A DNA stretch of 35,456 bases from Octopus bimaculoides (lineage: Eukaryota): NCBI RefSeq assembly GCF_001194135.2, contig NC_069000.1, positions 24,272,006 to 24,307,461 on the forward strand, given 5' to 3'. Below, in pieces: positions 5,060-34,404 of the stretch; the stretch's first letter is position 1; each line of letters begins with the position of its first letter. Below the pieces are notes generated by a model, which did no database searches, was not told where the DNA came from, and saw only the letters and a list, made by a program, of their open reading frames with translations. The position numbers and the translations under genes were made by a program.

Positions 5060-5262
5060 GTGTGTTTATGTACTGACCGTATCTTTGTGTTTTCCCCCAC
5101 TATCGCTTGACAACCAGTGTTGGCTTGTTTACGTTACGGTAGCGTAGTAATACAAACCGATAGAATAAGTACGAGCCTTAAAAAATATGTACTCTGACCG
5201 ATTCATTCGACTAAAACATTTGAAGACAATGTTTCAACGGACTGCAATCAAATGACTAAAAG
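5060..5262 (+). mobile_element. SINE family A, 3' module
   Basis: CGCTTGACAACC...ACCGATAGAATAAGTAC...CGACTAAA...AATGACTAAA matches 6350-6545 and the reverse complement of 28915-29120. Confidence 0.8.
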
Positions 5263-5449
5263 ACAAAAGATAATATATATATTTATATATATATATACAC
5301 ACACATTACACAAACATAGACACACGTACGTGCTTGTGTGTCTGTATGCATACATATATACGTACAAACACTACACATACACGCACATGCATACCACACA
5401 CGAATACACACACACACACACACGTATATATAAGAAACGTTGCACTTAC

Positions 5450-5694
5450 GAAAATTTTGCTGTGACGACTAAGGCGTACGGTTACATTATAAATTTGTAT
5501 ATCTAATGAGCGTGGCCAGGAAACAAATTTATTTGTACCGCGTTTTTCATTCTGTATTTCAATTCGGAAATCGCATCCATCTTTAAAGTTCCGTGATTCA
5601 GAAAGAATGTGTTTGCAATCACTCATCAGATGAATGGTTTGACCATCAAATGTGTGGAAATGAGGATCACCGGACACTGTACATTTGCACAGAT
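5450..5694 (-). CDS. Exon encoding the N-terminal half of a von Willebrand factor type D (VWD) domain; secreted EGF-VWD protein (zonadhesin/FCGBP/mucin-like)
   Basis: Acceptor ttccatag| at 5694 (phase 1) and donor |gtaagt at 5449 (phase 0); 245 nt. Translates (D)LCKCTVSGDPHFHTFDGQTIHLMSDCKHILSESRNFKDGCDFRIEIQNEKRGTNKFVSWPRSLDIQIYNVTVRLSRHSKIF, with the VWD signature CxxxGDPHxxTFDG. Confidence 0.93.
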
Positions 5695-6093
5695 CTATGG
5701 AATTCAAACAGAATATGTATATATGTATATCTACAGGGTGTTTGGGCTAAATTTGTCAGTTTGAATAAAAGGAAAAGAGAACACAATATACTGTTGTTTG
5801 TAGAGAGGGTCATTATGCCTATAGCAATTAAAATAATCACACGTACTTTTTATTTTACCACCTTTTTATTTTACCAAATAACAATCCAATGGTTAGTTTA
5901 ATGTGTTGATTGAACAAACAATCTGTTGCTACTTTTCTCTGTCAGAGTACTTTCGTTGCTATTTGCGACCTCATCAATGCTCACTCTTTAAGCTCTGCTT
6001 TGAGTCTGTAATGAGAACTAATCTTATGTCTTAAACATTTGGCAGTCATCGTGATTTGAAAATTCATCTACAAAATTCAAATGTTTTACTTAC

Positions 6094-6313: not shown

Positions 6314-6545
6314 GCGCGTGTGTGTGTATATGCGCGTGCGTGTGTGTGTCTATGTCTGTGTTTGTCTCCCACCACCGCTTAACAACCTGTGTTAGTGTTT
6401 ACGTTCCCTTCATTTAGCAAAAGAGACCGATAGAATAAGTGCCAGGCTTAAAAATTAAATACTGGGGCGATTCGGTCGACTAAAATCTTCAAGGCGGTGC
6501 CCCAGCATGGCCGCTGTCTAATGACTGAAACAAGTAAAAGATAAA
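6094..6545 (+). mobile_element. SINE family A, complete copy (tRNA-like head, CORE-like segment, internal (TA)n/(TG)n, 3' module)
   Basis: Head with GGTTCAGTCCC B-box-like motif and CACCTTGGGCAAGT (similar to the MIR/CORE motif). Homologous to 25674, 28915 and 29906. Confidence 0.85.
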
Positions 6546-8436
6546 AAATACTTATTTATCTGTTATTGTTTGTTAGTTTTTGTGATGTCAATTGTTATTC
6601 AATCAATCCGAGTCGCGCACATACAACACTCGCACACAAGCAATCATAAATATATTATAAATGTAGGGTTATGTTTGCAATTTTTTTTAAAATGAGGGCA
6701 TAATATAAATCATATAAGGGAAAATGTCGAGGAGACGCCAAAAACTACTGTATTTGCGTATCAGAAATGTCATGAATATTTTTTCAGAGGAAAACGAGTA
6801 GTTGATACTCATTATGTTATTCGCCCTGCAGCATTGGATGCTGAAGCAGCTAACCTACAATGATAATAAAAAAAAACTGGGACTTTGCAAAGCATTTCCA
6901 CAGAGTTGATCACGGAACAATACGCTACAAAATTCGCGACTTCTCTAAAATTGAAAAGTAGGAGGGAGAACATTGAAGAGCAATGTCCCCCTGAAATTCA
7001 GACAGTTGCAGTATCATGAGGGAGCAGGCAAAGCATTTGGAACAGCCGTATTTATCGAAATAATTAGCGTAGAACTAGAATAAAACCCATGGCGTTTCAT
7101 AACATAGTCACAGCCGGATGGCTGAAATCACTATAAGATATATACGATATATATACGATATATACAATATATATTGTGTATATATATGTAAGGGACGACC
7201 GTGCGAACTCAAAAAGGAGAAATGGTGACGAATGGAAAAACAGAGGACTCCTTTTATTTAAACGTGTCACACGGTCGAACATACAATATATATATCGATT
7301 GATGATATACATGATATGTTATGCGACGATAACATAGATGACCAGTAATGAAAGACCACAACCGTATTAGATGAATAACAGAGATATTTATTGTAGTGTT
7401 AAAGATGTATGTCTGTGTGAGAGTGTGAATGCGACATATAAGAACATAATCAAAGACAGGCCGTCATACAAAGAAAAGTGTGTATGTGAGTGATACATGT
7501 ATGTGTATGTGTATTATTACAGCAGATAGAAAGAGAGTCAGTAAATGACACGTGAGCAATTATACCANNNNNNNNNNNNNNNNNNNNNNNNNNNNNNNNN
7601 NNNNNNNNNNNNNNNNNNNNNNNNNNNNNNNNNNNNNNNNNNNNNNNNNNNNNNNNNNNNNNNNNNNNNNNNNNNNNNNNNNNNNNNNNNNNNNNNNNNN
7701 NNNNNNNNNNNNNNNNNNNNNNNNNNNNNNNNNNNNNNNNNNNNNNNNNNNNNNNNNNNNNNNNNNNNNNNNNNNNNNNNNNNNNNNNNNNNNNNNNNNN
7801 NNNNNNNNNNNNNNNNNNNNNNNNNNNNNNNNNNNNNNNNNNNNNNNNNNNNNNNNNNNNNNNNNNNNNNNNNNNNNNNNNNNNNNNNNNNNNNNNNNNN
7901 NNNNNNNNNNNNNNNNNNNNNNNNNNNNNNNNNNNNNNNNNNNNNNNNNNNNNNNNNNNNNNNNNNNNNNNNNNNNNNNNNNNNNNNNNNNNNNNNNNNN
8001 NNNNNNNNNNNNNNNNNNNNNNNNNNNNNNNNNNNNNNNNNNNNNNNNNNNNNNNNNNNNNNNNNNNNNNNNNNNNNNNNNNNNNNNNNNNNNNNNNNNN
8101 NNNNNNNNNNNNNNNNNNNNNNNNNNNNNNNNNNNNNNNNNNNNNNNNNNNNNNNNNNNNNNNNNNNNNNNNNNNNNNNNNNNNNNNNNNNNNNNNNNNN
8201 NNNNNNNNNNNNNNNNNNNNNNNNNNNNNNNNNNNNNNNNNNNNNNNNNNNNNNNNNNNNNNNNNNNNNNNNNNNNNNNNNNNNNNNNNNNNNNNNNNNN
8301 NNNNNNNNNNNNNNNNNNNNNNNNNNNNNNNNNNNNNNNNNNNNNNNNNNNNNNNNNNNNNNNNNNNNNNNNNNNNNNNNNNNNNNNNNNNNNNNNNNNN
8401 NNNNNNNNNNNNNNNNNNNNNNNNNNNNNNNNNNNA

Positions 8437-9884: not shown

Positions 9885-10268
9885 CATGGCACCCAGTCAG
9901 TTACGACGACGAGGGTTCCAGTTGATCAGATCAACGGAATAGCCTGCTGATGAAATTAACGTGCAAGTGGCTGAGTAATCCACAGACACGTCTACCCTTA
10001 ACGTAGTTCTCGGGGAGATTCAGCGAGACACAGAGTGTGACAAGGCTGGCCTTTTGAAGTACAGGTACAACAGAAACAGGAAGAAAGATTGAGAGGAAGT
10101 TGTGGTGAAAGAGTACAGCAGGGTTCGCTATCAGCCCCTGCCGGAGCCTCGTGGAGCTTTAGGTGTTTTCGCTCAATAAACACTCACAACGCCCGGTCTG
10201 GGAATCGAAATTGCGATCGCACAACCGCAAGTCTGCTGCCCTAACTACTGGGCCATTGCGCCTCCACT
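9885..10268 (-). mobile_element. tRNA-headed SINE, family C
   Basis: Minus strand begins GTGGAGGCGCAATGGCCCAGTAGTTAGGGCAGC (A-box-like) and has TTTCGATTCCC (B-box-like), followed by a ~300-nt body. Family identity is recalled, not shown by a second copy here. Confidence 0.75.
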
Positions 10269-24902: not shown

Positions 24903-25640
24903 ATACAGGGGGTCCCAAAAGTCACTGAGGAGTTTTAATTTTTAAAAACTCCCAAATTTTTACAAATAGTTGTATGAAAGTTTAATTCAATATAGAAGAG
25001 ATAATGGAGATTAATTTGCATTAGTCCTTTTTCAGCGTACCTCTGCATTACGTATGAAAAATGACATCTTTTCAATGGCATTCATTTTCAGCTTCATACA
25101 TCCGTGCCATTTCCAAAGTATGTTCCATGACAGCTGTAGGGGTTTCCGTGATATTCTCCTTCAATTGCTCCAGGGTTTCTGGTTTGTTGTCATAAACCTT
25201 CTCTTTGAGGTAACCCCACAAGTCAGGGCTGGTCAAGTCTGGGGAACATGATGGACAGTTGACATCGCAGTAGCGACAGATGATTTTTCTCTCCAAAATA
25301 TTGCCTCGGCAACTGTATTGTCTCTCTTGCTGGAACCACATATCAGGCTTTCCTCTTGCTGGAAACACATATCGAGTACTTTTTGCGCCCGGCCTTTCAA
25401 ATAGGCCCGATATGTGTTTCCAGCAAGATGAGACCTCACCAGTCACAGTGGCAACATTCCCATCATCGTCCTCAAAGAATTAAAGCCCGATTATCTCATC
25501 CACCATAATTGCACACCATACAGTACACTTTATGATGTACAATTCTCTTTGGTGCTCTTTGGGTTTGAATAATTGACCCCTGATTTTGATAGAATAATTT
25601 CACCACTTGAGTGCGTTGTGCGGTGTTATATTTTTCCATA
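24903..25640 (-). mobile_element. Decayed maT/DD37D-type mariner transposase C-terminus with terminal repeat
   Basis: KCTVWCAI...IIG...FFEDDDGN...TVTGE; DMWFQQ; CPSCSPDLTSPDLWGYLKEKVYDNKPETLEQLKENI. TA-CAGGGGGTCCCAAAAGTCAC terminus at 24903. Confidence 0.85.
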
Positions 25641-25673
25641 ATTAATTTCCAGAACCTAATCCATAAAATCCAT

Positions 25674-25830
25674 GAGTGGCTGTGTGGTAAGTAGCTTACT
25701 TACCAACGACATGGTTCCGGGTTCATTCCCACTGCGTGGCACCTTTGGCAAGTGTCTTCTACTATAGTCTCGGGCCGACCAATGCCTTGTGAGTGGATTT
25801 GGTAGACGGAAATTCAAGGAAGTCTGTCGT
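25674..25830 (+). mobile_element. SINE family A, 5' module running into (TA)n and a gap
   Basis: GTGGCTGTGTGGTAAG...GGTTCATTCCC...CACCTTTGGCAAGTGTCTTCTACTATAG; homologous to 6094. Confidence 0.88.
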
Positions 25831-26463
25831 ATATATATATATATNNNNNNNNNNNNNNNNNNNNNNNNNNNNNNNNNNNNNNNNNNNNNNNNNNNNNNNN
25901 NNNNNNNNNNNNNNNNNNNNNNNNNNNNNNNNNNNNNNNNNNNNNNNNNNNNNNNNNNNNNNNNNNNNNNNNNNNNNNNNNNNNNNNNNNNNNNNNNNNN
26001 NNNNNNNNNNNNNNNNNNNNNNNNNNNNNNNNNNNNNNNNNNNNNNNNNNNNNNNNNNNNNNNNNNNNNNNNNNNNNNNNNNNNNNNNNNNNNNNNNNNN
26101 NNNNNNNNNNNNNNNNNNNNNNNNNNNNNNNNNNNNNNNNNNNNNNNNNNNNNNNNNNNNNNNNNNNNNNNNNNNNNNNNNNNNNNNNNNNNNNNNNNNN
26201 NNNNNNNNNNNNNNNNNNNNNNNNNNNNNNNNNNNNNNNNNNNNNNNNNNNNNNNNNNNNNNNNNNNNNNNNNNNNNNNNNNNNNNNNNNNNNNNNNNNN
26301 NNNNNNNNNNNNNNNNNNNNNNNNNNNNNNNNNNNNNNNNNNNNNNNNNNNNNNNNNNNNNNNNNNNNNNNNNNNNNNNNNNNNNNNNNNNNNNNNNNNN
26401 NNNNNNNNTATATATATATATATATATATATACATAAATGCGTATTCATATATACATATATAT

Positions 26464-26503
<40 letters not shown>

Positions 26504-26999
26504 GAAGAAAACCAAGAGGTACAATATGAATATGTTTATTTCACCAGTTGGGACCCATAAGATTGCAATCGTTTCACAGCCATCATGGAACAATAATTTA
26601 TTTTAGAGTATAATAACTTATTTTACATGTCTGCACTATTGTATATGCTATAAATTACATTGTATTATTGTACATTTTACAAGGTAGTACAGATATAGAA
26701 TGGCTAACCCATCATATCCATAGAATATTATGGTTACATCCATTCTTCACCTCCAATATACACATAAAAATTCATCTTCGAAATATTAATGTACAGAAGA
26801 CAATAATCAATTAAATAATTTTTAAAGAAGGCAAAAGAGATTTTGTAAGATATTAAAAAGGAGACAGTGAGTAGTGGTGGTGGAAATGAAGATTGCATAT
26901 AGTATAATAGAGGGAGAATCAGATAGTTTAACGTTAATAACCGCGAAGTATTAATAAAAGACAAAAGCAAATTTACTAGGTTCGAAGTCGAACGCAACA

Positions 27000-27420
27000 C
27001 CACATACGATAAAGTGGAAAACAGTTGAAAAAAACCTACCATATGATAACGGATCAAAGAAATGTAAGCTATGCGTAGCTGAAAGGACTCAGATCTAAGA
27101 TCTCTAACTCACTGCTGAACTCTAGATCCGAAATTTTGAGTAGATGTAAGCAAACGCGTAAGTTCCTACTGAAGAATTGTGAAGTACCTTCCCCACCGGA
27201 TTAAATCTGTATCATTAACTCTAAGCCACTATCTTTTCAGCCTTATAATTTATGATCTAAAGGAAATAACTCTTATTCCCCTTTTGTTTCTTTCTGGTTA
27301 TTTTTCCGTTTTCCAGTTTTTCACCATTCCACTTTTATCACTTTTTCTCTCGTCCCATTTTTAGTTCGTTATGCCATATGGGTAGTGTCTGATGATTGTG
27401 TTGGGACACCAGACGTATTA
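27000..27420 (+). mobile_element. Penelope-like element C-terminus and 3' UTR with degenerate hammerhead
   Basis: HTIKWKTVEKNLPYDNGSKKCKLCVAERTQI*...LLNSRSEILSRCKQTRKFLL. CTGATGA at 27389-27395 is followed by a TGTGT/ACACCA hairpin and a truncated GA(AA)CGT. Confidence 0.82.
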
Positions 27421-27487
27421 TAAAACAATATTCGGCATGTTCTCAGCACGTGAAATTAATAGTAGTACATAAAAACATACATTGTGT

Positions 27488-27744
27488 TCATTATTTACAT
27501 TATTTACAATTGACGGATATTCGTCCTCATCTTGCTTGTGGTTAACACGTTTCGGCTGATATACCCTCCAGCCTTCATCAGGTGTCCTGGGGAAATTTCG
27601 AACCTGGGTTCTCATTCCTAAGTCTTCTTCTTCTTCTTCTTCTTCTTCTTCTTCTTCTTCTTCTTCTTCTTCAGGTCAACACCTCGAATCGAATTCGGAA
27701 TCTTGGGGTTAGTAACCCACGCTCTTAACCACTACGACATATGC
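27488..27744 (-). mobile_element. tRNA-headed, hammerhead-containing SINE (left arm, internal (GAA)n)
   Basis: Minus strand: GCATATGTCGTAGTGGTTAAGAGC...AATTCGATTC, (GAA)n, then GACAC-CTGATGA-A-GGCTG/CAGCC-GAAA-CGTGTT (HHR 27544-27587). Confidence 0.85.
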
Positions 27745-27748
27745 CCAA

Positions 27749-27821
27749 GCATATGGCGTAGTGGTTAAGAGCGAGGGCTACTAACCCCAGCATTCCGAGT
27801 TCGATTCCACGCAGTGACCTG

Positions 27822-27870
<49 letters not shown>

Positions 27871-27926
27871 TAATAGTAATAATAATAATAATAATAATAA
27901 TGATAATAATGATGATAATAATAATG

Positions 27927-27966
<40 letters not shown>

Positions 27967-28153
27967 TAACATCGGAAAAAATACCTTATGAATGAGAACC
28001 CAGGCTCGAAATTTCCCTAGAACACCTGATTAAGGCTGGAGGGTATATCAGCCGAAACGTTGTGTTAACAACAAACAAGATGAGGACAAATATCCATCAT
28101 ATGTAAATAATGTAAAAAATGTACATAATTCCTCATCTCTTAAATATAGAACT
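27749..28153 (+). mobile_element. tRNA-headed, hammerhead-containing SINE (right arm, internal (AAT)n)
   Basis: A box TGGCGTAGTGG 27754-27764, B box GTTCGATTCC 27799-27808, (AAT)n, then AACAC-CTGATTA-A-GGCTG/CAGCC-GAAA-CGT-T-GTGTT (28021-28066). Confidence 0.87.
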
Positions 28154-28199
28154 ATATATTGTGTTTATTATATATGTCTGTATATATATATATAAATAA

Positions 28200-28253
<54 letters not shown>

Positions 28254-28436
28254 GTCTATCTATCTTTCTATCTGTATATGTATGTATATATATATATATG
28301 TTTATGTGTGTGTGAGAGAGAGAGGGGGAGGGAGAAAGGAAACAGAGGGAGAGAGTCCGAGAGAGGAGATAAAGAAAAATATCTAAGCCAGGAAGTATAT
28401 CAACATACTCAGTAATCAGTATATTTTATTAGTTAC

Positions 28437-28508
28437 CTCTATATTGTCTGATGTTATCAAGTTTCTTATGAAAAGTGTTGAAGAGATTATGTCTGTCACT
28501 GCCGGTTC
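28437..28508 (-). other. Candidate 72-nt upstream exon (5' UTR or coding) of the minus-strand gene
   Basis: ctccgttatgttctacag| acceptor and GAG|gtaact donor. No ATG; open in phases 0 and 1. No homology support. Confidence 0.25.
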
Positions 28509-28914
28509 CTGTAGAACATAACGGAGAAAAAAATCAATTTTATTTAGGAAGCATCATGTGATTCATAAGAGAGTAAACGTAAGATGCTGCTACATTCATC
28601 ACTCATTTTTTCATACGACCTTATTCATGGCATCCGATAATGCTAGCGGAGGAAGGATGTAGATATCGCCGACTGGATACCTACAGTCCTTGCAATAAGG
28701 AGGACTCTAAAGGTAATCTGTGCAAAATCAGGGGAGTTTCTACAAATCGAAACTGGAGGAAGGCGCTTCATCTCAGTTCGCCAACGAGTCAGTAATGGCG
28801 TCTTTACTCGGTAGCTTGGATTGCTAGAAATAACAGCTAAGTCTCTTTAATATTACACCGATCGTCATAAAAAGGGAGGGACAGGTTGGGTAATGTAGTT
28901 TTAAAGTACCTTTT

Positions 28915-29298
28915 ACCTTTGACTTGTTTCAGTCATTTGACTGCAGCCATGCTAGGGCCACTGCATTGAAGGGTTTAGTCGAAAACAATCGCCCCAAGGA
29001 CTTATTTTTAAAGCCTAGTACTTATTCTATCGGTCTCTTTTAGCGAACCACTAATTTACGGGAACGTAAATACACCAACACCGGTTGTCAAGCGGTAGTG
29101 GGAGAGAAACACAGAAACAAAGACATACACACATAGATATATACGACGGGCTTCTTTCAGTTTCTGTCTATCAAATCCACTCACAAAGCTTTGGTCGGCC
29201 TGAGGCTATAGTAGAAGACACTTGCTCAAGGTGCCACGCAGAAAGATTGAACCCGGAACGATGTGGTTGGGATGCAAGCTTCTTACTACACAGCTACG
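28915..29298 (-). mobile_element. SINE family A, complete copy with very short internal microsatellite
   Basis: Reverse complement aligns along the length of 6094-6545. Confidence 0.88.
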
Positions 29299-29457
29299 TA
29301 TGTGTAAGCAAAAATACAGGATGGTGTGGCTGGAATGTTTTTATTCATATATCTGCTCGGTCAAGGTTGACCTAGGGCTAAACAACAGCCGTTTCACTGG
29401 CTGAGTTGTTGAGATTTTATCATAACTCTTCAACATGACTGTTCATATTTGTTTCAA

Positions 29458-29790
29458 ATTTGAACTCAGAACGCAATGACAGACGAAATGCCGCTAGGCA
29501 TTTTACCCGGTGTGCTAACGATTCTGCCAGCTCATTTGACTTAAGGTGCCTGTTCATATTAATATTTTCTTTCAAACAGAGGTTCAAAGACAGAAATTTG
29601 GTGATGGTGACAGTGGTGGTTGGATGTTTAGATGATTATATCGACCCCATTATTTAATTGGCATTTCATTTTACCGATCTCGGAAAGATGAAAGTCAAAG
29701 TCAACTTTCGAGTGATCTGAAATCAGAATTCAAAGAGATGTAACAAAATAGCATAAAGCATTTGTACGCCGCTCTACCAATTCTGCAATT
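29458..29790 (-). mobile_element. Two SINE family B fragments (29458-29545 and ~29635-29790)
   Basis: TTTGAACTCAGAACG...GTGCTAACGATTCTGCCAGCTC, and a more decayed second copy. Confidence 0.75.
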
Positions 29791-29798
29791 CTGCAAAT

Positions 29799-29894
<96 letters not shown>

Positions 29895-29905
29895 TAGTAA
29901 TAATT

Positions 29906-30068
29906 GGCGCAGACGTGGATGTGTAGTAAGAAGCTTGCTTCTCAACCACATGGTTCCGGGTTCAGTAACACTGTGTAGCACCTTGGGCAAGTGCCTTCTA
30001 CTATAACATCGGGCCAACCAAAGCCTTGTGAGTGAATTTGATAGAAGGAAACTGAAAGAAGCCCGTCG
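29906..30068 (+). mobile_element. SINE family A, 5' module
   Basis: Homologous to 6094 and 25674; ends GAAAGAAGCCCGTCG followed by (TA)n. Confidence 0.88.
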
Positions 30069-30510
30069 TATATATATATCTATATCTATATCTATATATA
30101 TATCTACATTATATATATATATATNNNNNNNNNNNNNNNNNNNNNNNNNNNNNNNNNNNNNNNNNNNNNNNNNNNNNNNNNNNNNNNNNNNNNNNNNNNN
30201 NNNNNNNNNNNNNNNNNNNNNNNNNNNNNNNNNNNNNNNNNNNNNNNNNNNNNNNNNNNNNNNNNNNNNNNNNNNNNNNNNNNNNNNNNNNNNNNNNNNN
30301 NNNNNNNNNNNNNNNNNNNNNNNNNNNNNNNNNNNNNNNNNNNNNNNNNNNNNNNNNNNNNNNNNNNNNNNNNNNNNNNNNNNNNNNNNNNNNNNNNNNN
30401 NNNNNNNNNNNNNNNNNNNNNNNNNNNNNNNNNNNNNNNNNNNNNNNNNNNNNNNNNNNNNNNNNNNNNNNNNNNNNNNNNNNNNNNNNNNNNNNNNNNN
30501 TAAATTTGCT

Positions 30511-32266: not shown

Positions 32267-32513
32267 ATTTGGGGTTGGTCATATTGCCAGTTTAGCCAAT
32301 AAAAACACACGCACTGTATATTTGGTGTTAATTTGCTTCAGCTTTATATTACATTACATTACATTAATCCTATTTCGGCCAGAGTTCTTTCATCACACTT
32401 CTGTGACCTCATCAGTGGTCCTTTGCTTTCTTCTTTCTTATGTGTGTACCACCTTGCTAACTATCAGCCATTTATTGGTTAAACTGGCAATATGACCATC
32501 CCCAAATACAACA
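32261..32513 (-). mobile_element. 253-bp element with 43-bp inverted termini enclosing a hammerhead-like core
   Basis: 32261-32303 versus 32471-32513 are reverse complements at 41/43. Minus strand CTGATGA (32415-32409), GGTCA...TGGCC, GAAA (32376-32373). Confidence 0.65.
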
Positions 32514-32904: not shown

Positions 32905-33022
32905 TTTTGTCTGTGTTTGCTTCCCCCGTCAACGCTTGACATCCGGTGTTGATGTGTTTAAGTCCCCGTAACTTAACGGTTCAGCAAAAATGACCGATAG
33001 AATAAGTACTAGGCTTAAAAAC
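32905..33022 (+). mobile_element. SINE family A, 3' module; further tail fragment at 34071-34150
   Basis: CGCTTGACATCCGGTGTT...CCCCGTAACTTAACGG...ACCGATAGAATAAGTACTAGGC. Confidence 0.82.
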
Positions 33023-33658: not shown

Positions 33659-34404
33659 TTTCACCTTCCTAATGCCAAGAAACTGTATAAACGTCACAAA
33701 CAACTTTTGCTATATATGAATAATATGTAAAATATTAAGACAATTGACGAAAAATATCTATAACAAAATTCTAATTGATAAATACAAATTTTTATTAACA
33801 CAAAACACTGTGTGAAGAATCAACACATGCGTGTGAAACACAACACAACGTGCGGTTGTCATGGTAACAAGCTGCTAATGTCCCGCTGTCTGTTGATTGG
33901 CTAAAATTATCCAAATTTCCCAACTTTAATTCTAAATAACATCAGATTCTTTAATTTACGAGATAAAATAATTGGTTGACCGTAATCAAATTTCAGAGTT
34001 GCATTGATACACCAAAACTGAAAGCAATCTGAGCAAAATTAAAAGGGGGCTCATTTTGCGAATGAGAAAGACTAGATCCCGATTTGTTCGACTAGAACCC
34101 TTCGAGGCGATGGCCCAGCATGGCCACAGTCAAATGATTGAAACAAGTAAAACAATAGAAGAATAGAAGAATAAAATAAAAATAAAATTTAGTTTTCTTC
34201 TTCAGGGAAATAGAGCATTTTAAATATACTTACCGAGAGGAAGCATGAATCGCTCTGAAAAGACAAAACATAATTTTAATTATAATACTCATTAAATGTT
34301 TAACTGGGCTTTTTATCCGGATAAAGGAGAGTTAACTGTAAAGTACTTCTATTCGAAATAACATTCATATAAGAAACTAACAAACCTAATATATTGGTTT
34401 CAAA

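What the first reader, a model, noticed from the sequence alone, without database searches (positions are those of the whole stretch)
27488..28153. Head-to-head pair of Pol III SINEs carrying hammerheads with complementary defects: a possible split, trans-complementing ribozyme
Seen: two copies of one element (tRNA-like head with A/B boxes, microsatellite, type I HHR, AT-rich tail) are joined 5'-to-5' across a 4-nt spacer (CATATGC-ccaa-GCATATG), forming a ~635-bp imperfect palindrome with divergent promoters. The left HHR has an intact core (CUGAUGA, extra A, 5-bp stem II, GAAA) but a 3-nt deletion removes its cleavage site and stem I 3' strand. The right HHR has a perfect stem I (AACAC/GUGUU) and a GUU site but G8>U. 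Both keep the ACGU palindrome. Established: minimal PLE-type HHRs cleave as dimers through such a palindrome, an extra A between A9 and G10.1 is tolerated, and schistosome Sm-alpha is a precedent for a tRNA-SINE with an HHR. Inference: (i) a SINE family that may be mobilised by Penelope-like machinery, sitting just after a PLE 3' end; (ii) the left transcript could act as enzyme strand on the right transcript (GACAC pairs with GUGUU); (iii) the precise 5'-5' fusion may reflect the inverted-end integration typical of PLEs. The complementarity of the defects may be coincidental decay.
Basis: partly seen in the sequence, partly recalled or inferred. Interest (0 to 1): 0.86.

Follow-up and report, generated by a model that had tools for sequence, protein, structure and literature searches.

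The report
Decayed inverted pair of hammerhead retroposons
Two old, mutated copies of a short mobile element that carries a hammerhead ribozyme motif sit head-to-head in an invertebrate genome; the layout looks like a footprint of Penelope-type retrotransposition, and nothing supports a working two-part ribozyme.

Summary
The sequence observation holds. Window 27481-28129 is a 649-bp imperfect palindrome made of two copies of one about 265-380-nt unit: L on the minus strand (27481-27746) and R on the plus strand (27747-28129). Each copy has Pol III A and B boxes, a microsatellite, a minimal type I hammerhead (HHR) and an AT-rich tail. The defects are as described: L lacks 3 nt at the cleavage site, and R has G8>U. 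The HHR motifs are far above chance (0 of 300 shuffles).

The HHR has the published hallmarks of Penelope-like-element (PLE) minimal hammerheads. A head-to-head repeat with a palindromic junction and 3' ends outward is a published PLE insertion signature. However, only these two copies could be found anywhere, so a "SINE family" is not established. No PLE coding remnant lies upstream.

The split, trans-complementing ribozyme idea is not supported:
- The enzyme arm (L) has the weaker promoter boxes.
- The required L+R dimer is predicted about 3 kcal/mol less stable than the separate folds.
- One lesion per copy gives "complementary" defects about 24% of the time by chance.

Verdict: an ordinary decayed transposon pair and a new member of a known kind. 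It is of modest interest as a possible Pol III-driven passenger of PLE machinery.

The parts
27481..27746 (-). Left copy (L) of the retroposon, 266 nt: head, (AAG)n, body with HHR, AT-rich tail. Its 3' end is at 27481.
   Evidence: Inverted repeats and alignment. A TTTTT run lies 6 nt past its 3' end, at 27471-27475.
27747..28129 (+). Right copy (R), 383 nt: head, (AAT)n plus an extra CATCGGAAAAAATAC, body with HHR, AT-rich tail. Its 3' end is at 28129.
   Evidence: The first T4 run downstream is at 28424.
27738..27755 (.). Head-to-head junction CATATGC-CCAA-GCATATG. The predicted tRNA-type +1 positions, 27746 (L) and 27747 (R), abut.
   Evidence: The +1 positions are counted from the A boxes (inference).
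27754..27764 (+). R A box TGGCGTAGTGG (0 mismatches to TRGCNNAGTGG)
27798..27808 (+). R B box AGTTCGATTCC (1 mismatch to GGTTCGANNCC)
27729..27739 (-). L A box TGTCGTAGTGG (1 mismatch, G10>T)
27685..27695 (-). L B box AATTCGATTCG (3 mismatches, including the G53 position)
27623..27672 (-). L internal microsatellite, (AAG)~16 in element sense
   Evidence: TRF, alignment
27823..27969 (+). R internal microsatellite, (AAT)~49 with GAT and AGT variants
   Evidence: TRF, alignment
27542..27587 (-). L minimal type I hammerhead. The core is intact (CUGAUGA, extra A, GGCUG/CAGCC, GAAA, ACGU). Relative to R it lacks 3 nt, so G follows ACGU and there is no helix I 3' strand.
28020..28068 (+). R minimal type I hammerhead. 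Helix I is AACAC/GUGUU, the site is GU-U, and predicted cleavage is after 28061. G8>U is at 28031.

Best explanation
The locus is a pair of old, individually inactivated copies of one short non-autonomous retroposon, joined 5' end to 5' end with their 3' ends pointing outward.

The unit consists of:
- an internal Pol III type-2 promoter (A and B boxes at tRNA spacing in a degenerate tRNA-like head);
- an A-rich linker that has grown into a different microsatellite in each copy;
- an about 145-nt 3' body with a Penelope-type minimal hammerhead and an AT-rich tail ending in (TGTAAATAA)2-like repeats.

How an active copy would work (inferred). Pol III transcribes from the head through the body. 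The 3' body, with its hammerhead fold, is the part borrowed from a Penelope-like element, and the PLE reverse transcriptase/endonuclease uses it in trans.

How the palindrome arose (inferred). The PLE integration route often leaves an inverted copy at the 5' end with a small palindrome at the junction. Here both cDNAs reached the RNA 5' end.

What happened since (sequence differences shown, interpretation inferred). The copies diverged by 4-17% depending on the segment. R lost G8. L lost 3 nt at the cleavage site and part of its promoter boxes. The 'complementary' defects are coincidental decay. The locus has no ribozyme function today. If transcribed end to end, it would simply fold into a long hairpin.
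For: - Collinear inverted copies with sharp common ends.
- A/B boxes at 44-nt spacing, against 0.005 expected per shuffled window.
- HHR descriptor hits in both arms, and none in 300 shuffles.
- The same core/helix II pattern (CUGAUGA-A-GGCUG...CAGCC-GAAAC-palindrome) recurs in repeat families on metagenome contigs. Most are not bacterial by content: L001 carries a mariner-like ORF and L012 an RT-like ORF by my reading. L010 is GC-rich and looks bacterial.
- Head-to-head inverted repeats with palindromes at the junction, AT-rich or microsatellite targets, and trans-mobilisation through pLTR sequences alone are described for PLEs (PMC3846280, PMC8557442).
- The junction lies exactly where the +1 of a tRNA-type Pol III unit would be in both arms. 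Full-length cDNAs predict this. A random DNA break does not.
- A second hammerhead-bearing element in the same window (18306-18774) also has an inverted partial copy with 3' ends outward, at 97% arm identity.
- Against any present function: L's boxes are damaged. The trans dimer is disfavoured by about 3 kcal/mol. The chance of complementary lesions is about 0.24.
Against: - Only two copies exist in everything I could search. With two copies, the 'element ends' are defined only by where the arms stop matching.
- No target-site duplication flanks the pair.
- No PLE RT or GIY-YIG remnant was found in the 1 kb upstream that I scanned. No autonomous PLE was available for comparing 3' ends.
- The tail similarity to the other HHR element is marginal (R arm above shuffles, L arm not).
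- The head is not a recognisable tRNA.
- The other minimal-HHR carriers retrieved have no A/B boxes upstream, so the head-plus-HHR combination is not general.
- The HHR-containing segment differs less between the arms than the head and tail do (5/81 versus 22/136, post-hoc p = 0.03). This could mean different source copies or some constraint rather than pure neutral decay.
- The tail repeats would also fit a LINE partner.
Confidence: 0.6

Rival explanations
1. DNA-level fold-back (inverted) duplication. A break next to one copy, or next to an arbitrary stretch holding a Pol III head, an A-rich tract and an HHR fragment, was repaired by self-priming at a tiny inverted repeat (GC-TTGG-GC on the minus strand). 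This copied about 270-380 bp in reverse. No second retrotransposition was involved.
For: - Only two copies are known, and their common ends follow by definition from a duplication.
- There is a short non-palindromic 4-nt centre flanked by GC/GC microhomology.
- No TSD is present.
- The 4-17% divergence and the separate microsatellite growth fit an old duplication.
Against: - The axis falls within 0-2 nt of the predicted +1 of the Pol III head. A random break would do this in roughly 1 in 1000 cases (inference).
- A second template switch is needed to end the copy after a few hundred bp.
- The PLE-type HHR and a second inverted HHR element in the same window make the retrotransposition route the simpler one.
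Confidence: 0.2
2. Two independent insertions. A second copy of the same SINE landed exactly at the 5' boundary of an older one, for instance because the endonuclease likes the CATATG/AT-rich sequence there.
For: - The microsatellites differ, (AAG)n versus (AAT)n, and R has an extra 15 nt.
- Divergence is uneven along the unit, as expected if the copies came from different source elements.
- PLEs tend to insert into or next to earlier copies (PMC6765202).
Against: - Hitting the exact 5' end by chance is very unlikely.
- Neither copy has its own TSD.
- Microsatellites turn over fast, so their difference is weak evidence.
Confidence: 0.1
3. Split, trans-complementing hammerhead. Divergent Pol III transcripts from the two arms pair through ACGU/ACGU and GACAC/GUGUU. 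The intact core of L then cleaves R after 28061.
For: - The pairing scheme is formally correct for a double-hammerhead, in which each active site takes its enzyme part from one copy and its substrate part from the other (Forster et al. 1988, as cited in PMC4209133).
- The L core is intact, and the R site and helix I are intact.
- The HHR segment is the least diverged part of the unit (96%).
Against: - L's A box has a mismatch and its B box has three, including G53, so the 'enzyme' transcript is the less likely to be made.
- The constrained trans-HHR dimer has -23.6 kcal/mol, against -26.9 for the two separate folds.
- Minimal PLE HHRs are barely active in vitro, even as cis dimers (PMC4209133, PMC6765202).
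- With one lesion per copy, complementarity arises by chance in about 24% of cases.
- No second locus or species shows the arrangement.
- Cleavage would only cut 68 nt off a dead SINE transcript.
Confidence: 0.02
4. Hairpin-RNA source. A read-through transcript across the palindrome folds into about 70-bp and 145-bp double-stranded stems. These are diced into small RNAs that silence the element family. This is compatible with the best explanation as a by-product.
For: The 649-nt plus-strand RNA folds at -301 kcal/mol, against -122 +/- 7 for shuffles (z = -24.8). Generic miRNA-precursor models match the central hairpin, but below their gathering scores. PLE inverted structures are sources of small RNAs in rotifers (PMC3846280).
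Against: Any inverted repeat folds this way. There are no expression data. The Rfam matches are far below the family thresholds (51.7 versus 88 bits).
Confidence: 0.1
5. Assembly artefact. The palindrome was created by a chimeric read or a mis-join in a gap-rich draft assembly.
For: The window has 11 runs of N. PLE-type inverted structures are known to trouble short-read assemblies (PMC8557442).
Against: - The arms are only 83-96% identical and carry different microsatellites, unlike fold-back read artefacts, which give identical arms.
- The junction lies inside a 3.7-kb gap-free stretch (26409-30124).
- The longest exact inverted word is 17 nt, too short to mislead usual k-mer sizes (inference).
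Confidence: 0.04

Closest known systems
Minimal type I hammerheads of Penelope-like elements (Cervera & de la Pena 2014, PMC4209133; Lunse et al. 2017, as cited in PMC6765202)
   Same: CUGANGA core, an extra nucleotide between A9 and G10.1, a G10.1-C11.1 pair, a 5-6-bp helix II, GAAA, no loop 3, a palindromic ACGU that can form helix III only in a dimer, and type I topology. Thousands of such motifs lie dispersed in non-coding DNA of invertebrates (PMC7761336).
   Different: Here the motif sits behind a Pol III A/B-box head rather than in a pLTR next to an RT/EN ORF. No autonomous PLE was available for comparison. Both copies carry an inactivating change.
Sm-alpha / Sj-alpha SINE-like retroposons of schistosomes (Ferbeyre 1998 and Laha 2000, as summarised in PMC6765202)
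   Same: A short non-coding retroposon with a Pol III promoter and a hammerhead in the same transcript. Cleavage in cis or in trans was shown in vitro for Sm-alpha.
   Different: Sm-alpha carries a canonical HHR with loop-loop contacts and is often tandemly repeated. Here the HHR is the helix-III-less PLE type, there is an internal microsatellite, and the copies are inverted rather than tandem. I had no Sm-alpha sequence to align, so homology is untested.
PLE insertion architecture: inverted 5' copy, palindrome at the inverted junction, AT-rich or microsatellite targets (Arkhipova et al. 2013, PMC3846280; Craig et al. 2021, PMC8557442)
   Same: Head-to-head repeat with 3' ends outward, a small palindrome (CATATG...CATATG) at the junction, AT-rich and (TA)n-rich surroundings, and absent or variable TSD.
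   Different: In PLEs the inverted copy is usually 5'-truncated and sits beside a longer direct copy. Here both copies appear full length. The arms are 4-17% diverged, so a one-step origin cannot be read directly from the sequence.
Metazoan non-LTR retrozymes (Cervera & de la Pena 2020, as reviewed in PMC7761336; Li et al. 2026 preprint, 10.64898/2026.07.22.740005)
   Same: Short non-autonomous HHR-bearing repeats proposed to be mobilised by PLE machinery.
   Different: Retrozymes are tandem arrays that yield circular RNAs between two HHR sites and have no Pol III head. This locus has one HHR per copy, in opposite strands, so no unit-length RNA can be cut out.

Membership tests
Hammerhead ribozyme, PLE-type minimal type I | Conserved core C3-U4-G5-A6-N7-G8-A9 | tested here: inconclusive
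   L has CUGAUGA (27575-27581, minus strand). R has CUGAUUA with G8>U at 28031. Met in one copy, broken in the other.
Hammerhead ribozyme, PLE-type minimal type I | Helix II closed by G10.1-C11.1, followed by G12-A13-A14 | tested here: met
   GGCUG(G)...(U)CAGCC then GAAA, identical in both copies.
Hammerhead ribozyme, PLE-type minimal type I | Extra nucleotide between A9 and G10.1, and palindromic 15.2-16.2 without loop 3 (PMC4209133) | tested here: met
   An extra A and ACGU in both copies.
Hammerhead ribozyme, PLE-type minimal type I | Cleavable site (U16.1, H17 not G) followed by a helix I partner | tested here: inconclusive
   R has GU-U followed by GUGUU, which pairs with AACAC (5 bp). 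L has G at position 17 and 0 bp of helix I.
Hammerhead ribozyme, PLE-type minimal type I | Match to a curated hammerhead covariance model | tested here: not met
   No Rfam hammerhead hit at gathering score or at E<=10. The Rfam models include a helix III that this variant lacks.
Hammerhead ribozyme, PLE-type minimal type I | Self-cleavage activity (as a dimer) | not testable with these tools
   Needs in vitro transcription. Folding energies only: the trans dimer is 3.3 kcal/mol less stable than the separate monomers.
tRNA-derived SINE | Internal Pol III A and B boxes at tRNA spacing | tested here: met
   R has 0/1 mismatches and L has 1/3 mismatches. The spacing is 44 nt. Shuffled windows give 0.005 hits.
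tRNA-derived SINE | Head recognisable as a tRNA (cloverleaf or tRNA model) | tested here: not met
   ARAGORN finds none at default settings and only aberrant folds at 80% threshold or below. No Rfam tRNA match. Fold energies are not better than shuffles.
tRNA-derived SINE | Many dispersed copies with the same ends, each with its own TSD | tested here: not met
   There is no third copy in the 35-kb window and none in the viral, metagenome or prokaryote genome collections or the protein index. No TSD was found. The source genome itself could not be searched, so this is weak negative evidence.
tRNA-derived SINE | 3' tail shared with an autonomous partner | tested here: inconclusive
   The only candidate in the window is the 3' flank of the HHR element at 18130-18190. 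The R arm scores 21 against a shuffle maximum of 19. The L arm is not above shuffles.
PLE-mobilised non-autonomous element | Inverted head-to-head copy with a palindrome at the junction and 3' ends outward | tested here: met
   The feature is defined in PMC3846280 and PMC8557442.
PLE-mobilised non-autonomous element | Sequence similarity of the 3' region to the pLTR of an autonomous PLE of the same genome | not testable with these tools
   No RT/GIY-YIG PLE was found in the parts of the window I scanned, and the source genome was not available.
Split / trans-acting ribozyme pair | Both strands expressed, with the enzyme-arm promoter intact | tested here: not met
   L's A box carries G10>T, and its B box has 3 mismatches including G53>A. 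Expression itself is not testable.
Split / trans-acting ribozyme pair | Stable intermolecular enzyme-substrate complex | tested here: not met
   The constrained L+R hammerhead dimer has -23.6 kcal/mol, against -14.0 + -12.9 for the monomers.

The most novel reading that the evidence does not exclude
The unit represents a Pol III-transcribed SINE family that parasitises Penelope-like retrotransposition through a borrowed hammerhead-bearing 3' module. Its full-length 5'-5' dimers would be compact natural records of the still unresolved PLE integration step (self-priming, or priming from both target ends). I found no report of a tRNA-box SINE partnered with PLEs. The stronger claim, that the two arms form a working split ribozyme, I put at about 0.02.
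Probability: 0.3. Interest if true: 0.55.

Novelty: new member of a known kind. Interest (0 to 1): 0.3.

Why it matters
How PLEs integrate is still unknown, including why they leave inverted copies and what their hammerheads do (PMC8557442, PMC7761336). A short Pol III-driven passenger carrying only the hammerhead-bearing 3' module would mark out the minimal cis-acting sequence that PLE machinery needs. If such a family also shows an excess of full-length head-to-head dimers, it would give a simple genomic read-out of the two-ended or self-priming step. This locus is no more than a decayed example that points to such a family. It does not show a new ribozyme mechanism.

Tried and rejected
- Rfam at gathering score over the whole window gave nothing, and E<=10 searches on 27200-28300 and 27665-27830 found no hammerhead or tRNA. 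The only matches were generic hairpin/miRNA-type hits below threshold.
- ARAGORN finds no tRNA at default settings. Relaxed runs give aberrant folds.
- Searches for further copies all failed: BLAST of head and body against the window, and pattern scans of viral contigs, metagenome contigs and prokaryote genome contigs.
- The metagenome scan returned 12 other minimal-HHR carriers. None belongs to this element, none has A/B boxes upstream, and none lies next to a clear PLE ORF.
- I tried to fish out other copies through their accidental ORFs in the protein index, and to identify the organism through the ORF of the neighbouring abundant SINE. Neither search found candidates, and the exact look-up found nothing.
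- The upstream 'PLE 3' end' gave nothing. The pseudo-ORF ending ...KKCKLCVAERTQI has no Pfam match and no homologue. A six-frame Pfam scan of 26500-27480 found nothing relevant, and that region is not repeated in the window.
- I first took the window for penaeid shrimp because of its microsatellite load. I dropped that after seeing a second SINE family that I recall from octopus genomes. Neither assignment is verified.
- The Lunse et al. 2017 paper was not held, so its results are cited only through reviews.

Full report
**Context.** The window is a gap-rich eukaryotic draft scaffold with 11 runs of N, about 35% G+C and very many microsatellites. It holds several short interspersed elements, a mariner-like transposase remnant and one von Willebrand type D exon. 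It is therefore an invertebrate animal genome. A neighbouring SINE family looks, from my memory only, like the abundant octopus SINE. I could not verify the organism.

**The observation**
- The repeat finder reports three collinear inverted-repeat blocks between 27481 and 28129 with 4 nt between the innermost arms.
- Aligning the reverse complement of the left half with the right half shows a single unit: a 75-nt head, a microsatellite, a 35-nt pre-HHR segment, a 46-49-nt hammerhead and a 61-nt AT-rich tail.
- The corrected limits are L = 27481-27746 (minus strand) and R = 27747-28129 (plus strand).
- Identity by segment is head 83%, pre-HHR 91%, HHR 96% plus one 3-nt indel, and tail 85%.
- The microsatellites differ, (AAG)~16 against (AAT)~49, and R has 15 extra bases.
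- No other copy lies in the window.

**Promoter boxes.** R has a perfect A box and a one-mismatch B box. L has one mismatch in the A box and three in the B box, including the G53 position. Both have the 44-nt A-to-B spacing of tRNA genes. Shuffled windows give 0.005 comparable pairs. The head is nevertheless not recognisable as a tRNA by ARAGORN, by Rfam or by folding. 'Pol III A/B-box head' is established; 'tRNA-like' is only loosely so.

**Hammerheads**
- A descriptor was run on both strands: core CUGAN[G/U]A, 0-2 extra bases, helix II of at least 4 bp closed by G-C, GAAA, a palindrome, then helix I.
- It finds R (28020-28068), L (27542-27587, minus strand), a third motif at 18346-18438 (minus strand) and one weak hit at 32362-32423.
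- No hit passing the length filters I counted occurs in 300 dinucleotide shuffles, against two (strict) or three (loose) observed.
- R reads GAACAC-CUGAUUA-A-GGCUG...CAGCC-GAAA-CGU-U|GUGUU. Helix I and the GUU site are perfect, but G8 is U (28031).
- L has the intact core, but GAAACGU is followed by G with no helix I partner, which corresponds to a 3-nt loss relative to R.
- Both keep ACGU, which has no loop and can only make helix III between two molecules.
- These traits match those listed for PLE hammerheads (PMC4209133): an extra base after A9, G10.1-C11.1, a long helix II and palindromic 15.2-16.2.
- Rfam's hammerhead models do not match, as expected for helix-III-less variants.
- A scan of metagenome contigs with the core and helix II pattern returned 12 loci. 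L001-L009, L011 and L012 are AT-rich repeat families with the same layout (for example GAAAC-AUGU). L010 is GC-rich and looks like a bacterial chance match.
- None of the 12 loci belongs to this element, and none carries A/B boxes upstream.

**Is it next to a PLE?** No evidence supports this. The pseudo-ORF that ends at 27107 (...KKCKLCVAERTQI) has no Pfam match and no homologue. A six-frame Pfam scan of 26500-27480 finds no RT or GIY-YIG domain. The CUGAUGA at 27389 lacks GAAA and a helix I.

**Origin of the palindrome.** PLE insertions often carry an inverted copy at their 5' end. They show palindromes at the inverted junction and favour AT-rich or microsatellite targets. Their pLTR sequences alone suffice for mobilisation in trans (PMC3846280, PMC8557442). 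This locus has the same geometry: 3' ends outward, CATATG...CATATG at the junction, and a (TA)n-rich right flank.
- Two full-length cDNAs would place the axis at the predicted +1 of both heads. A random DNA break would do so only rarely (inference).
- A second HHR-bearing element in the window (18306-18774) also has a 68-nt inverted copy of its 3' end, 97% identical, with 3' ends outward.
- I therefore favour a PLE-style integration.
- A DNA-level fold-back duplication remains possible. It could use the GC-TTGG-GC microhomology. There are only two copies, so the shared outer ends prove nothing, and there is no TSD.
- An assembly artefact is unlikely. The arms differ by 4-17% and in their microsatellites, and the junction lies inside a 3.7-kb gap-free stretch.

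**The split-ribozyme idea.** In a double hammerhead, each active site takes its enzyme part from one molecule and its substrate part from the other. L-enzyme on R-substrate is therefore formally intact: GACAC pairs with GUGUU (one G-U pair) and ACGU with ACGU. Four points argue against it.
1. L, the supposed enzyme, has the more damaged promoter boxes.
2. The constrained L+R hammerhead dimer is predicted at -23.6 kcal/mol, against -26.9 for the two separate folds. The unconstrained dimer prefers a different pairing.
3. Minimal PLE hammerheads cleave very poorly in vitro, even as cis dimers (PMC4209133, PMC6765202).
4. With one inactivating lesion per copy, spread over 26 enzyme, 4 shared and 6 substrate positions, 'complementary' defects arise in about 24% of pairs.

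The HHR-containing part is somewhat less diverged than the head and tail (5/81 versus 22/136 substitutions, post-hoc p = 0.03). For the HHR alone the values are p = 0.08, or 0.2 if the indel is counted. This is weak. It fits copies from different source elements, or the CpG-rich head decaying faster, as well as any constraint.

**What the locus can still do.** A transcript reading through the whole palindrome would fold into a long hairpin (-301 kcal/mol, z = -24.8). This is a generic property that could feed small-RNA pathways. L has a TTTTT run 6 nt past its end, while R has no T4 run for about 295 nt.

**Comparison and novelty.** The architecture of Pol III boxes plus a hammerhead has the schistosome Sm-alpha elements as precedent (PMC6765202). 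The ribozyme type and the inverted geometry are those of PLEs. Dispersed minimal HHRs are known in the thousands (PMC7761336). Retrozymes are proposed PLE passengers (10.64898/2026.07.22.740005). I found no report of an A/B-box SINE partnered with PLEs. However, two decayed copies do not establish one. I rate it a new member of a known kind, with interest 0.3.

Noticed in passing
window 18306-18774 (minus strand); HHR at 18346-18438: A third hammerhead motif: CUGAUGA, a long helix II (GAAGA...UCUUC with about 55 nt between), GAAAC, the palindrome ACAUAUGU, C17 and a 5-bp helix I. Its 3'-terminal 68 nt recur as an inverted copy 333 nt upstream (97% identical, 3' ends outward), flanked by TA-rich DNA. 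It looks like a PLE-type non-autonomous insertion with an inverted truncated copy. It has no A/B boxes, and its 139-aa ORF has no Pfam match.
   Followed up: partly
window 25670-25840 (+) and 29133-29303 (-); related 3' pieces at 5156-5301, 6420-6553, 32987-33021, 34080-34152: A second, unrelated A/B-box SINE family. Two copies in opposite orientation bracket the palindrome (alignment score 114 over about 170 nt), and each ends in CGTCGTATATAT/(TA)n. From memory it resembles the abundant octopus SINE, which would make the window cephalopod. This is unverified.
   Followed up: partly
window 10201-10255 (minus strand): Another A/B-box pair (TGGCCCAGTAG ... ATTTCGATTCC, spacing 44) inside GGCGCAATGGCCCAGTAGTTAGGGCAGC..., probably a third tRNA-derived SINE family.
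   Followed up: no
window 5309-5707 (minus strand): A 133-aa open frame matches the von Willebrand factor type D domain (Pfam PF00094, E = 4e-11). It is probably an exon of a host gene.
   Followed up: no
window 25072-25446 (minus strand): A 124-aa ORF whose motifs (WFQQ..., SPDL..DLWGYLK) look to me like the C-terminus of a mariner/Tc1-type transposase. It has no Pfam match, and I take it for a decayed DNA transposon.
   Followed up: partly
window 26900-27110 (+): A broken reading frame ending ...NGSKKCKLCVAERTQI*, with a CxxC motif, just upstream of the palindrome. It has no Pfam match and no homologue, and its origin is unknown.
   Followed up: partly
window 27590-27612 (L) and 27995-28017 (R): The segment just before each hammerhead contains a second B-box-like word (GGTTCGAAAT in L, GGCTCGAAAT in R) and the perfect 8-nt palindrome GAAATTTC. 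It is conserved between the arms (91%), and its meaning is unknown.
   Followed up: no
loci L001-L009, L011, L012 (metagenome contigs): These are repeat families on contigs that mostly do not look bacterial. By my reading, L001 has a mariner-like ORF, L012 an RT-like ORF and L008 a polymerase-like ORF. They carry minimal hammerheads with the same CUGAUGA-A-GGCUG...CAGCC-GAAAC core, followed by the palindromes ACAUGU or ACGU. This suggests the helix II sequence is widely shared among such HHRs.
   Followed up: partly
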